Positions 40,764 through 43,627 of a stretch of DNA of 64,000 nt are shown in pieces. Within the stretch, counting starts at the first letter, position 1. Every line of letters starts with the position of its first letter. Source of the stretch: Saccostrea cucullata (taxonomy: Eukaryota). The notes beneath the pieces are model-generated. The model was given only the letters and a program-made list of their open reading frames with translations. It was not told the origin of the DNA and ran no database searches. The stretch covers positions 1 through 64,000 of the forward strand of contig NW_026937089.1 in NCBI RefSeq assembly GCF_032062105.1, in the 5' to 3' direction. Position numbers and translations under genes: made by a program.

Positions 40764-43627
40764 ATGGAATCTCAGAGGGATTCAGAGGGTTACGAGCGCC
40801 CCCTATCGTGTGTCAAGTGTGACAAACACGTACAATTCGTGTGTGAGCCATGTGATAGCAGTTTCTGTAACAAGTGTGTAGGAGAACATGTATCTAACAG
40901 GGAGAGTGGAAGTCATGACGTCACATTTCACAAAATGTACCGGGAAAAAGTAATAAAGGTACAGAAATGTGACTGATACAACCTGTATCTGTGTAGGCAA
41001 TACGAATGAACACTAAATAAGGGGTTTTTTATTATCTGTTTGTTTGTTTTATCCAACTTCATTTCATATAAAGTAAAATAAATGTAGATAAACCAATTTC
41101 ATCACCAGAATCCATGAAAAAAATCCGGAGAGAAAAAACTTTCTGCATTGATCATATTTATTTTCTTTGATAAATTTTACTTTCTATTATATAACTTAAT
41201 TGATACGAGTCGTATCTATATAATTTTGTTTATGTCTATAGGCAATACGAATGAACACAAAATAAAAATTTTTTTTGTTATCTGTTTGTTTGTTTTAACC
41301 AACTTCATTAAGTATAAAATAAAATAAATGTCGATAAACCGATTTCATCACCAGAATCCATGAAAAAAATCCGGAGAAAAAACTTTCTGCATTGATCATA
41401 TTTATTTATTTTGATAAATTTTACTTTCTATTATATAACTTAATTGATACGAGTCGTATCTATATAATTTTGTTTATGTACATGATTTTATTTTGTTGAA
41501 GAAAAATAAAAGAAAAGAAAGCGTGCCAGTTATAAAGTGTGTTGTGGATGGTTGGCAAATGAGCGGAAAAACAAGCATGATCCAAGCGTACATCGACGGC
41601 AAATGCCCAAAGTTTGAGAGCATCCATCCCACAGTCCACGAGATCCACACCGTGGATATACGACACCAGGGTAGAGAAGTCTGCATTCATTTATACGACA
41701 TTCCAACCTGTGAATTCTATGATGGACTCCGAAGAGTTATCCTACAGGAAGTGACTTATGACGTCATCCTCCTTTGCATTCCCATTGATTTCGTGAATTT
41801 GGAGAGAGAATCAAAAATTGTAAGTCATTAGTTTTATTTTTTTATTATGATATTTATGTTATTTTTTATTTGAAATGATTAAAATGTTAAGCCCCATTCA
41901 AAGTATATTACAAAGCTATGCACACAGAGAAAATGCAGTTCTTATCACGTGATGAGCAAAGTGTTTTGTTGAGAAATAAAGCTAAATTGCCGAACAAAGC
42001 CATTTGAAAATGTAAATATTTAGAAACCTAATTATATATCTCTGCTTCTCTCTAGCTTTTGAAGAATTTTAACAGATGTCTTCCTGACCCCCCTCCAGTC
42101 ATTGTTATCGCCACAAAAATAGACCTCCGCGAAAAAGGAGAACTGAAGCGGAAATTGCTGACGTCAGAGGAACTCCGCCACTTCGCTCGAACTATAAATG
42201 CAGTCGGTTATTTTGAGTGTTCTGCAGTTCAAAACGTGAGCACTTTTTTGTTCATTATAGGGCTTAACTCTATCGGGGGTCCTGAGTCCACTTGTAGAGC
42301 GAACTCAGTACCCTTGGCGTTATATCGTCAGTGTTTTGGTGATTTTGTCTTCTCCAGATTTTGGATCAGATTTACGTCAGTCACCAGAGGCCAAAATTAC
42401 TATTGGAGGTATAAGGAATTTCAGCGAGCGCTCGCGAACGTTGGCTCTGCTGAACAGGCCTCAGGCTGCTCAGCGGCCGAAAAATTGCATAGTTGAGCTC
42501 ACTTTTGTTCTCAGTCTCACTTTTCCACTCTATATTTCTTTTGTAAAAGTGGGGCTGAAATCAAAAGTAAGCTCGACTTAAGTTGTCCCTGGAACCAGAC
42601 CAGGACCTGTTGTTGGAAGGGATATAGAAACGCGCTTATGGGTGTATACATGTTGTACACAGGCAAAAGTGGCTCACATAAATTTCAAGTGAATTCTTAG
42701 CATAAAAAAGACACGAAAAACAAGACATGTGAAATTTATGTGATTTTTACATAAATTTCATATGAACTTTACATTAAGAGCGTATCTCATATATATCGTG
42801 CAAAGAAAACTTCATATGAAAGTTCAAAAAAAGATTTATGTGAATATCATTTAAACTTATATTCACATGATATTCACATGAAAATATATTCATATAATTT
42901 TCATATGATTTTCACATAATTTTCAAATAAAAAGATAATCACATGAATATCATGTAAGCCACTTTTCCCTGTGTAGTGGTGATGGAGACGTTGTTCTTAA
43001 TTGTGTGCGTAACGGAAGTGACGTTAGCATGGCATGGAGAATGCTGCCTTGATTTACATAGATTATGCTCTTTGTCGAGGGGATGTTGTCGCGTTTCTAT
43101 TTTAAATTTTATGAAAATCGATTCCTGTTAATTAGCCTAATTGGCTGATTATCTCTATACTTGTAAAAAAAAAACAAAAAAAAAAACGGGTTTTAAAGCC
43201 ACAAAAGGAACGGGGTCTTCCATCAGATTAACCTTCGGATATCAATAATATTAAATATTAATTATTTTCTTTGACTTTCTTTGTTTTGTTGATATGGGGA
43301 TTGTAAACTTTATAGAACATATGGAAAAAAAATGGGGGATATTATGACACTTTCTAGCTAGAACATTGAATCATGCTTGCTTCATATGGTCCGTTTCATA
43401 TAAAGTACGCTAGTTGTATATATAGTACACCAGCGTACTGCATGAAACAAGCGCCCAAGCTCTGAGAGTACAAACGATTTTATATACCAGACTGGTACAT
43501 TTCTTATATATTGTAGGAGAGTTTCGAAGATATTCTTCAAGAAATAGCAACAATCTATTTTACGCCAGGCAAGCTGACAAGGGACAGGCGACTCTATAGA
43601 CAACATGAACACTGTCTAATTATGTAG
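40764..43627 (+). CDS. B-box zinc finger fused to an atypical Rho-family GTPase with C-terminal CAAX (267 aa, 4 coding exons)
   Basis: Exons 40764-40958 (CVKC..CEPC..CNKCVGEH..SHDV B-box), 41502-41819 (IKCVVDGWQMSGKTS..PTV..LYDIPTCEFYDGLR), 42056-42235 (VIVIATKIDLR..AVGYFECSA), 43517-43627 (ESFEDILQEIA...HEHCLIM*). All phase-0 GT-AG junctions. Confidence 0.8.
40995..41478. repeat. ~245-bp direct tandem duplication filling intron 1 of the B-box/Rho gene
   Basis: taggcaatacgaatgaacac...gatacgagtcgtatctatataattttgtttatgt occurs twice. Confidence 0.9.
42656..42975. mobile_element. MITE with internal (t)tcacatgaa repeats
   Basis: tacacaggcaaaagtggct ... agccacttttccctgtgta TIRs. Confidence 0.75.

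What the first reader, a model, noticed from the sequence alone, without database searches (positions are those of the whole stretch)
40764..43627. B-box zinc finger fused to a prenylated, catalytically degenerate Rho-like GTPase
Seen: four in-frame exons give a TRIM-type B-box1 (CxxC..CxxC..CxxC..H..H), a basic linker, a Rho fold and a CAAX box (CLIM). Against Rac/Cdc42, G1 is GWQMSGKT (Gly12-equivalent = Gln), switch I PTV is kept, G3 DTAGQ has become DIPTC (Gly60 and Gln61 equivalents lost), and G4 TKID and G5 CSA are kept. Known: loss of the G12/Q61 equivalents makes Rnd/RhoH GTPase-deficient. B-boxes mediate oligomerisation in TRIMs, which are heavily expanded in bivalves. The TRIM-GTPase fusion I know of (TRIM23) uses ARF, not Rho. 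Inference: this may be a lineage-specific membrane-anchored, GTP-locked or pseudo-GTPase adaptor created by exon shuffling, possibly linking TRIM/ubiquitin immunity to cytoskeletal signalling.
Basis: partly seen in the sequence, partly recalled or inferred. Interest (0 to 1): 0.8.

Follow-up and report, generated by a model that had tools for sequence, protein, structure and literature searches.

The report
Oyster B-box–Rho fusion gene
This is a real, conserved, oyster-only gene that joins a TRIM-type B-box zinc finger to a very divergent Rho-like GTPase lacking its catalytic residues and ending in a lipid-anchor signal; databases list it only under automatic names ("RhoH-like", "Rac1-like") and I found no description of it.

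Summary
Four phase-0 exons with GT-AG borders (40764-40958, 41502-41819, 42056-42235, 43517-43627) translate to pieces that tile RefSeq XP_062585619.1, "rho-related GTP-binding protein RhoH-like" of Saccostrea cucullata (267 aa), exactly.

- **B-box:** exon 1 is a B-box1-type zinc finger with eight invariant Zn ligands. Its closest solved fold is the PML B1-box.
- **GTPase:** exons 2-4 model as a confident Rho-like fold. G1 (GWQMSGKT), Thr35, Asp57, G4 (TKID) and G5 (CSA) are kept. Gly12, Gly60 and Gln61 equivalents are lost, and the Rho insert is truncated.
- **C-terminus:** the CAAX box ends in Met in all four lineages where exon 4 was found.
- **Conservation:** the same architecture, splice sites and motifs occur in Ostrea edulis and in a second assembly (GCA_033153115.1). 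dN/dS is about 0.1 overall and 0.15-0.29 for the B-box exon.
- **Distribution:** an exhaustive search of 1.84 billion representative proteins found close relatives in only three clusters (two traced here to Saccostrea-type and Ostrea sequence, one unidentified); the gene is single-copy in this genome.

It is therefore neither a pseudogene nor a chance pattern. It is not a TRIM, having no RING and no coiled coil. I could not obtain read evidence for the exon 1-2 junction. The proposed role, a farnesylated, GTPase-deficient Rho-like adaptor clustered through its B-box, is inference.

The parts
40764..40958 (+). Coding exon 1 (65 codons): start codon, B-box1-type zinc finger and the start of the basic linker. 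Donor GT at 40959.
   Evidence: Equals P0033 residues 1-65. dN/dS 0.15-0.29.
40809..40916 (+). B-box core from Cys16 to His51: C-x2-C-x7-C-x2-C-x4-C-x2-C-x3-H-x8-H, eight Zn ligands.
   Evidence: The eight ligand columns are invariant in 24 orthologous and paralogous B-boxes (A2). The AF2 model's best solved matches are the PML B1-box entries 6imq and 2mvw.
40959..41501 (+). Intron 1 (543 bp, phase 0). Most of it is a local 244-bp tandem duplication at 40994-41479.
   Evidence: the repeat occurs nowhere else in the genome. The corresponding intron is about 670 bp in L002 and about 3.66 kb in O. edulis.
41502..41819 (+). Coding exon 2 (106 codons): basic linker KNKRK, strand beta1, G1, switch I, G3/switch II. 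It has no start codon of its own before the P-loop.
   Evidence: 97% identical in L002, 74% in O. edulis. dN/dS 0.035-0.09.
41550..41573 (+). G1/P-loop GWQMSGKT. The Walker A pattern GxxxxGKT is intact; the Gly12 equivalent is Gln84 (Lys in a third lineage).
   Evidence: Alignments.
41628..41636 (+). Switch I PTV, with the Thr35 equivalent (Thr109) kept. A 2-residue insertion lies just upstream, and the Phe28 equivalent is Cys.
41697..41711 (+). Degenerate G3 DIPTC. Asp57 equivalent kept; Gly60 becomes Thr134 and Gln61 becomes Cys135.
   Evidence: Conserved as DIP[TS]C in all orthologs.
42056..42235 (+). Coding exon 3 (60 codons): G4 TKID (42113-42124), truncated Rho insert, G5 CSA (42218-42226).
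   Evidence: An 8-column gap falls in the insert region.
43517..43627 (+). Coding exon 4 (36 codons plus stop): C-terminal helix, basic stretch, CAAX box CLIM (43613-43624), TAG stop.
   Evidence: The CAAX box is CLLM in L002 and O. edulis and CSLM in the third lineage.

Best explanation
Shown: this is a genuine, single-copy protein-coding gene found only in oyster-type sequence. It is Saccostrea cucullata XP_062585619.1, 267 aa, with orthologs in Ostrea edulis, in a second assembly and in unidentified related sequences. One chain carries an N-terminal B-box1 zinc finger, a short basic helical linker, a very divergent Rho-derived G domain and a CAAX box ending in Met. The gene is under strong purifying selection.

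Inferred mechanism:
- The G domain still binds guanine nucleotide, because the P-loop GxxxxGKT, Thr35, Asp57, TKxD and CSA are all conserved.
- It cannot hydrolyse GTP or cycle like a normal switch. A bulky Gln or Lys sits at position 12, Gly60 is Thr, and Gln61 is Cys.
- It therefore acts as a constitutively loaded, Rnd/RhoH-like atypical Rho rather than a GEF/GAP-driven switch.
- The CxxM end would be farnesylated and would hold the protein on a membrane.
- The B-box1 would provide self-association or docking onto the hugely expanded RING-less B-box/NHL proteins of oysters.
- Activity would then be set by expression, clustering and localisation rather than by nucleotide exchange.

Likely origin: the 5' end (start codon plus B-box1) of a single-exon B-box gene was captured upstream of a Rho gene in an ancestor of Saccostrea and Ostrea, or earlier.
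For: Gene model:
- Exons tile the RefSeq protein exactly.
- GT-AG borders, phase 0 and the same intron positions occur in three genomes, although intron 1 varies from 543 bp to 3.66 kb.
- Exon 2 has no in-frame ATG before the P-loop in Saccostrea, so it needs an upstream coding exon.
- Three independent annotations join e1 to e2 (P0033, P0045, P0001).

Selection:
- dN/dS is 0.135 against L002 (dS 0.37) and 0.11 against O. edulis (dS about 2).
- The B-box exon gives 0.15-0.29 and the GTPase exons about 0.1.

Domains:
- All 60 listed PDB sequence hits for exon 2 are Rho family, RhoD best at 1.2e-8.
- The AF2 G domain has pLDDT 80-95, and Foldseek finds RhoD, Rac, RhoA and Rnd1 with TM 0.75-0.89.
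- B-box: Pfam, eight invariant ligands, and the PML B1-box as top fold match with TM 0.75 and rmsd 1.7 A.

Motifs: G1, T35, D57, G4 and G5 are kept, and G12, G60 and Q61 are lost, in every lineage where the exon was found. CAAX is C-x-x-M in four lineages.

Restriction: only 3 clusters at E<1e-30 among 1.84 billion representatives. It is single-copy, with the nearest paralogs being canonical RhoA-like and Cdc42 genes at 34-35% identity.
Against: - No RNA reads were seen. Expression and the e1-e2 junction therefore rest on gene models and conservation.
- Loss of Gly60, a Phe28-to-Cys change and a 2-residue insertion in switch I could weaken or abolish nucleotide binding.
- The B-box scores below Pfam's cut-off within the full protein (22.1 against 24.1 bits). 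It is poorly modelled in the full-length AF2 run (pLDDT under 50), and its fold match has a weak E-value (0.03).
- Nothing tested here bears on farnesylation, oligomerisation or partners.
- Lack of Gln61 does not by itself exclude GAP-assisted hydrolysis; Rap proteins show this (my own knowledge).
Confidence: 0.6

Rival explanations
1. Nucleotide-free pseudoGTPase scaffold. The G domain has lost nucleotide binding altogether and serves only as a folded interaction module, tethered by its lipid anchor and its B-box.
For: DxxG is destroyed (DIPT). The Phe28 equivalent is Cys, switch I carries a 2-residue insertion, and the Ras Pfam score is only 54 bits against 125-220 for ordinary relatives.
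Against: GxxxxGKT, Thr35, Asp57, TKxD and CSA are all retained across lineages whose synonymous sites are saturated. Nucleotide-free pseudoGTPases usually lose these motifs (my own knowledge). RGK GTPases also lack the G3 glycine yet still bind nucleotide (my own knowledge).
Confidence: 0.15
2. Still a working switch. GTP would be hydrolysed with the help of a dedicated GAP that supplies the missing catalytic groups, or through a non-canonical residue.
For: All nucleotide-contacting motifs are conserved. Rap-type GTPases lack Gln61 and rely on a GAP asparagine (my own knowledge).
Against: Position 12 holds a bulky Gln or Lys, and this residue is not conserved between lineages. Gly60, needed for the switch II gamma-phosphate contact, is Thr. 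No candidate partner was identified.
Confidence: 0.12
3. Annotation artefact. The B-box exon belongs to a separate short gene or is non-functional, and the GTPase exons form their own gene with another first exon.
For: There is no read-level evidence. One public annotation of this locus in a relative is clearly chimeric, fusing it to the downstream lipase (P0001). This shows that models at this locus can be wrong.
Against: - Exon 2 lacks a start codon in Saccostrea.
- The phase-0 donor and acceptor are conserved in three genomes.
- Exon 1, including its linker, has dN/dS of 0.15-0.29.
- No other conserved open frame lies within 4 kb upstream.
- RefSeq models in two species agree on 267 aa.
Confidence: 0.07
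4. A decaying Rho pseudogene that happens to keep open frames.
For: Catalytic residues are lost, and the Rho insert is truncated.
Against: dN/dS is about 0.1. There are no stops or frameshifts in any ortholog despite dS of about 2. The same 'degenerate' residues are themselves conserved.
Confidence: 0.02

Closest known systems
Rnd1-3 and RhoH (atypical, GTPase-deficient Rho proteins)
   Same: Rho-derived G domain. Substitutions at the Gly12 and Gln61 positions with nucleotide-binding motifs retained. A CAAX box ending in Met, as in the farnesylated Rnd proteins (my own knowledge). Rnd1 is among the structural matches. RefSeq auto-names the protein 'RhoH-like'.
   Different: Only about 25-30% identical. 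It also loses Gly60 of DxxG, which Rnd, RhoH and RhoBTB keep (my own knowledge). The Rho insert is truncated. It carries an N-terminal B-box. It is not an ortholog, since the family was found only in oyster-type sequence.
TRIM23/ARD1 (RING, two B-boxes, coiled coil and a C-terminal ARF domain)
   Same: A B-box and a small GTPase domain on one polypeptide, with the B-box N-terminal.
   Different: TRIM23 has a RING, two B-boxes and a coiled coil, and its GTPase is ARF-type without a CAAX box. Here there is a single B-box1, no RING and no coiled coil. The G domain is Rho-type (Ras Pfam 54 bits; Arf 17.6 bits, below its cut-off). This is an independent fusion.
RhoBTB (Rho domain fused to other modules)
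   Same: An atypical, probably non-cycling Rho domain combined with a protein-interaction or ubiquitin-system module.
   Different: The order and the partner domain differ: RhoBTB has BTB domains C-terminal to the Rho domain and no CAAX in most members (my own knowledge). There is no detectable relationship beyond the Rho fold.
RGK GTPases (Rad, Gem, Rem)
   Same: Ras-superfamily proteins whose G3 motif lacks the DxxG glycine (DxWE) and which lack the catalytic Gln, yet bind nucleotide (my own knowledge).
   Different: A different subfamily, with calmodulin and channel-binding extensions and no B-box. The resemblance is functional analogy only.
RING-less B-box/NHL ('TRIM2/3/71-like') genes expanded in bivalves
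   Same: Their N-terminal B-box1 has the same eight-ligand spacing and 25-43% identity to exon 1. It lies at the same distance from the start codon.
   Different: Those are 560-590 aa single-exon genes that continue into a second B-box and NHL repeats. Here the chain switches to a Rho domain directly after B-box1.

Membership tests
Rho family of small GTPases | P-loop G1 GxxxxGK[ST] | tested here: met
   GWQMSGKT aligns with GDGAVGKT of canonical Rho proteins.
Rho family of small GTPases | G3 DxxG(Q) with Gly60 and catalytic Gln61 | tested here: not met
   The motif is DIPTC. Asp is kept, Gly60 is Thr and Gln61 is Cys, and this is conserved in all orthologs.
Rho family of small GTPases | G4 [NT]KxD and G5 (C)SA | tested here: met
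   TKID and ECSA.
Rho family of small GTPases | Rho insert, a helix of about 13 residues between G4 and G5 | tested here: not met
   There is an 8-column gap relative to canonical Rho proteins. The AF2 model shows a loop at residues 197-207 and no insert helix. About half of the extra length relative to Ras remains.
Rho family of small GTPases | Closest sequence and fold relatives are Rho proteins | tested here: met
   All 60 listed PDB sequence hits are Rho, Rac, Cdc42, RhoD or TC10. Foldseek's top hits are RhoD, Rac, RhoA and Cdc42. The nearest own-genome paralogs are RhoA-like and Cdc42.
Rho family of small GTPases | C-terminal CAAX prenylation box | tested here: met
   CLIM, CLLM or CSLM immediately before the stop codon. 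Prenylation itself cannot be tested with these tools.
B-box type 1 zinc finger | Eight Zn ligands with C-x2-C-x7-12-C-x2-C-x4-C-x2-[CH]-x3-4-H-x4-9-H spacing | tested here: met
   C16, C19, C27, C30, C35, C38, H42 and H51 are invariant in 24 sequences.
B-box type 1 zinc finger | Profile match above the curated threshold | tested here: inconclusive
   zf-B_box scores 24.9 bits (cut-off 24.1) for the exon alone. It scores 22.1 in the full protein and 18.0 in the O. edulis ortholog.
B-box type 1 zinc finger | B-box fold | tested here: met
   AF2 on A2 gives a mean pLDDT of 70.5. The best PDB matches are the PML B1-box entries 6imq (TM 0.75, rmsd 1.7 A) and 2mvw, followed by CYLD and CONSTANS B-boxes. 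E-values are weak (0.03) because the domain is small.
TRIM / RBCC family | N-terminal RING finger | tested here: not met
   The protein starts 15 residues before the B-box. The distance between the AG just upstream and the ATG differs by one base between species, which indicates 5'UTR. No RING-like open frame lies within 4 kb upstream.
TRIM / RBCC family | Coiled coil after the B-box | tested here: not met
   Only a 14-residue helix (53-66) precedes the G domain.
Rnd/RhoH-type constitutively GTP-bound Rho | Binds GTP and lacks intrinsic and GAP-stimulated hydrolysis | not testable with these tools
   This is inferred only from the substitutions at positions 12 and 61 and from the retained binding motifs.

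The most novel reading that the evidence does not exclude
Oysters evolved a private signalling module: a farnesyl-anchored, permanently nucleotide-loaded Rho-like domain whose output is controlled by B-box1-driven oligomerisation, not by GEFs and GAPs. Through B-box hetero-association it would plug into the hundreds of RING-less B-box/NHL proteins of bivalve innate immunity. This would be a new way of wiring a small G domain, a 'clustering switch', and the first B-box-Rho architecture.
Probability: 0.12. Interest if true: 0.7.

Novelty: new variant of a known kind. Interest (0 to 1): 0.45.

Why it matters
Atypical Rho proteins such as Rnd, RhoH and RhoBTB show how a G domain can be reused as a non-cycling regulator. 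This oyster protein goes further on two counts. It has lost the DxxG glycine as well, and it has gained a B-box, a module otherwise tied to TRIM self-assembly. It is a compact 267-aa natural test case for two questions:

- Can a Rho fold without Gly12, Gly60 and Gln61 still bind nucleotide?
- What does an isolated B-box1 do outside a TRIM?

It also illustrates how the huge bivalve B-box expansion seeds new architectures. The practical reach is modest. It is one single-copy, lineage-restricted gene with no expression or phenotype data, already present in RefSeq under misleading automatic names.

Tried and rejected
**RNA evidence**
- I looked for spliced ORF fragments in the protein collection and found none. 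The B-box exon alone gave no candidates. Queries spanning the e1-e2 junction returned only RefSeq models and genomic exon-2 ORFs that read into introns.

**B-box exon in other lineages**
- The O. edulis Logan contigs have no B-box within 1.27 kb upstream of exon 2. This is explained by the 3.66-kb intron 1 seen in the chromosome record.
- The B-box exon could not be sought in the third and fourth lineages. Their contigs are 2.2 kb or shorter, and look-ups for P0003, P0043 and P0038 were not on record.

**Structure and other hits**
- The full-length AF2 run did not resolve the B-box (pLDDT under 50). I re-modelled it with an alignment of paralogs.
- The multi-Ras hits P0004 and P0005 from the big search are runs of ordinary GTPase domains without a B-box.

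**Literature**
- Five full-text searches found no description of a B-box-Rho protein.
- The organism behind GCA_033153115.1 could not be identified.

**Rejected readings**
- A pseudogene reading and a TRIM-membership reading are both rejected (see the rival explanations and membership tests).

**Joined step**
- I did not concatenate the exon translations at any point. Every whole-protein analysis used the database protein P0033, which a search returned and which the four exon translations tile exactly.
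Full report
**1. What is in the sequence**

| Exon | Coordinates | Codons |
|---|---|---|
| e1 | 40764-40958 | 65 |
| e2 | 41502-41819 | 106 |
| e3 | 42056-42235 | 60 |
| e4 | 43517-43627 | 36 + TAG |

Every intron starts with GT, ends with AG and lies in phase 0. Each piece on its own reaches Pfam significance. 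zf-B_box scores 24.9 bits (cut-off 24.1) for e1, and Ras scores 22.6 and 21.9 bits (cut-off 21.6) for e2 and e3. The window holds no second copy. The 1.17-Gb genome holds only this copy. The next-best GTPase matches are a canonical RhoA-like gene and Cdc42, at 34-35% identity.

**2. It is an annotated but unstudied gene**

An exhaustive HMMER search with e2 against 1.84 billion representative proteins gave only three clusters below 1e-30. Five hits fell below 1e-10, and two of those are runs of ordinary Ras domains.

A word search with the natural N-terminal part of the best hit returned P0033. This is XP_062585619.1/XP_062585620.1, [quoted passage not shown], 267 aa. The four exon translations sit in P0033 at 1-65, 66-171, 172-231 and 232-267 without a mismatch. 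All whole-protein work used P0033 as the search returned it.

Orthologs and relatives found:
- **Ostrea edulis:** P0045 = XP_048769442.2, "ras-related protein Rac1-like", also 267 aa. It has the same B-box, GWQMSGKT, DIPSCE, TKID, CSA and CLLM.
- **GCA_033153115.1 (locus L002):** all four exons are present. Its deposited prediction P0001 is a chimera that runs from e3 into the downstream lipase gene.
- **A third lineage (Logan and ENA contigs, species unknown):** has e2, e3 and e4 with DGWKMSGKT, DIPTCEW, TKID, CSA and CSLM.
- **A fourth lineage (JGI contig):** has e2 and e3.

**3. Is exon 1 really part of the gene?**

I could not get reads. The protein collection holds no spliced fragments. 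The indirect evidence is nevertheless strong:
- In Saccostrea the open frame around e2 has no ATG before the P-loop Met, so e2 needs an upstream coding exon.
- The e1 donor and e2 acceptor are canonical and phase-compatible in three genomes, although intron 1 measures 543 bp, about 670 bp and about 3.66 kb.
- e1 is under purifying selection. Nei-Gojobori dN/dS is 0.29 against L002 (dS 0.30), and 0.20 and 0.15 against O. edulis, where synonymous sites are saturated.
- Three separate annotations join e1 to e2.
- An AG lies 6-7 nt upstream of the ATG in all three species. The spacing differs by one base, so the sequence before the ATG is 5'UTR and not a hidden RING exon. No RING-like frame lies within 4 kb upstream.

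Over the whole gene dN/dS is 0.11-0.14, and for e2-e4 it is about 0.1. This excludes a pseudogene.

**4. The B-box**

The spacing C16-x2-C19-x7-C27-x2-C30-x4-C35-x2-C38-x3-H42-x8-H51 fits B-box type 1.

A six-frame search of the own genome with e1 gave 1284 first-look candidates; the 150 that were scored all matched. Most lie about 20-30 residues into single open frames of 560-590 aa. The ones I sampled carry zf-B_box, and one of them also carries NHL repeats. These are RING-less TRIM2/3-like genes.

In an alignment of 3 orthologs and 21 paralogs, the eight ligand columns are the only invariant ones (A2). AF2 on that alignment gives a mean pLDDT of 70.5. The best solved matches are the PML B1-box (6imq, TM 0.75, rmsd 1.7 A; also 2mvw), followed by CYLD and CONSTANS B-boxes and RING or ZZ fingers. 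E-values are weak because the domain is tiny. Sequence search of the PDB finds the TRIM2 and TRIM3 B-boxes.

Caveat: within the full protein, Pfam's score falls just under its cut-off (22.1 bits). That probably explains why the automatic names ignore the B-box.

The homology with the paralogs stops right after B-box1, where they continue into B-box2. This points to capture of the 5' end of such a gene, not transfer of an internal exon.

**5. The G domain**

All 60 listed PDB sequence hits of e2 are Rho-family, with RhoD at 1.2e-8 followed by TC10, Rac, RhoG, RhoA/B and Cdc42. The hits for e3 are likewise Rho-family. AF2 on P0033 models residues 70-250 at pLDDT 80-95. Foldseek returns RhoD, Rac1/3, RhoA, Cdc42 and Rnd1 with target TM 0.75-0.89.

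Against canonical Rho proteins (A1):

| Element | State in this protein |
|---|---|
| G1 | GWQMSGKT keeps GxxxxGKT; Gln84 at position 12 (Lys in the third lineage) |
| Phe28 equivalent | Cys |
| Switch I | 2-residue insertion; Thr35 kept (HPTV) |
| G3 | DIPTC: Asp57 kept, Gly60 to Thr134, Gln61 to Cys135 |
| G4 | TKID, intact |
| G5 | CSA, intact |
| Rho insert | about 8 residues shorter; modelled as a loop |

The full-protein Ras score of 54 bits, against 125-220 for ordinary relatives, shows how divergent the domain is. The "degenerate" residues are themselves conserved across lineages with dS of about 2. They are therefore selected features and not decay.

**6. How it most likely works (inference)**

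Retention of every nucleotide-contacting motif under strong constraint argues that the protein still binds guanine nucleotide. A bulky residue at position 12 and the absence of Gln61 are the classic causes of GTPase deficiency in oncogenic Ras and in Rnd and RhoH (established knowledge). Loss of Gly60 should prevent the normal closure of switch II around the gamma-phosphate.

CAAX boxes ending in Met are farnesyltransferase substrates, as in the Rnd proteins. Canonical Rho, Rac and Cdc42 end in Leu and are geranylgeranylated (established knowledge). The solved PML B1-box structure is a multimer (title of 6imq).

My reading is a membrane-anchored, constitutively loaded, non-cycling Rho-like adaptor. 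Its activity would depend on expression and on clustering or docking through the B-box. I give this about 0.4-0.5 for the mechanism and about 0.9 for the gene being real and fused.

Rivals, in order of weight:
- a nucleotide-free pseudoGTPase;
- a switch rescued by a special GAP;
- a mis-joined gene model;
- a pseudogene, which the conservation data refute.

Nothing here supports the suggested link to ubiquitin, immunity or the cytoskeleton. There is no RING, so no E3 activity is expected.

**7. Comparison with what is known**

The protein works most like Rnd and RhoH, but it is not their ortholog and it fails two Rho hallmarks (DxxG and the insert helix). It resembles TRIM23 only in combining a B-box with a small GTPase. 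The GTPase class, the domain set and the origin all differ.

RGK GTPases are a precedent for a G3 motif without the glycine. An ESM-Atlas feature search pointed to clusters that combine Ras with RING fingers elsewhere, for example in nematodes. These scored below 0.9 and are leads only, but they suggest that fusions of a cross-brace zinc finger with a small GTPase have arisen more than once.

Five full-text searches found no paper on a B-box-Rho protein. Two unverified notes from this scan mention other atypical Rho candidates elsewhere in this genome. They are not close paralogs of this gene.

**8. Verdict**

- **Observation:** confirmed.
- **Interpretation:** partly supported. The architecture, lineage restriction, loss of catalytic residues and purifying selection hold. 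The function and the immunity link are speculative, and the protein is not a TRIM.
- **Novelty:** a new variant of a known kind. It is an atypical Rho with an N-terminal B-box, present in databases under automatic names but uncharacterised.
- **Interest:** moderate, 0.45.

Noticed in passing
window 40994-41479: Intron 1 is almost entirely a 244-bp unit duplicated in tandem (2.0 copies, 92-93% identical). The unit occurs nowhere else in the 1.17-Gb genome, so it is a recent local duplication and not a transposon.
   Followed up: yes
L002 10001-21481 (GCA_033153115.1, protein P0001): The deposited gene model of this relative is a chimera. It runs B-box, then the Rho N-half, then part of exon 3, and then splices into the downstream acid-lipase gene, giving 543 aa. 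The true exon 3 end and exon 4 with CAAX are intact at 11887-12072 and 12734-12841.
   Followed up: yes
window 47747-47998 (+) and 55316-55723 (-): The neighbouring genes are an acid/gastric-type lipase exon (Abhydro_lipase-like, same strand) and a kinesin motor exon (opposite strand). The same order of lipase then kinesin is kept in L002, which shows synteny.
   Followed up: partly
window 45566-47353 (+): Several copies of a repeated open frame ('...[40 protein letters not shown]...') lie between this gene and the lipase. This is probably a dispersed or tandem repeat element.
   Followed up: no
window 35406-36722 (-): A 438-aa open frame with no Pfam match lies upstream on the opposite strand. 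An unannotated 614-aa product also lies upstream and on the opposite strand in O. edulis (L007). I did not compare the two.
   Followed up: no
window 40653-40686 and 13179-13310: A (TC)17 microsatellite lies about 80 bp upstream of the start codon. A 132-base run of N (a gap or masked stretch) lies at 13179-13310; I left it untouched.
   Followed up: no
G000 loci L015, L018, L021, L024: Besides the 560-590 aa B-box/NHL genes, the genome has shorter open frames (164-351 aa) that start with the same B-box1. The two I scanned (L015 and L018) have no recognisable Pfam domain after it. This suggests that the B-box1 5' module is combined with many different C-terminal parts in this oyster.
   Followed up: partly
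L046 and L048 (G000:C21937 and C12276): These are two nearly identical intronless RhoA-like genes ending in CKIF, with canonical G1 and G3 motifs. They lie on different contigs and are either recent duplicates or haplotigs.
   Followed up: no
ESM Atlas clusters: Feature search lists clusters combining a Ras domain with RING fingers (zf-RING_UBOX or zf-C3HC4; one cluster is nematode). Scores are 0.86-0.89, so these are leads only. They hint that fusions of a cross-brace zinc finger with a small GTPase arose independently elsewhere.
   Followed up: no
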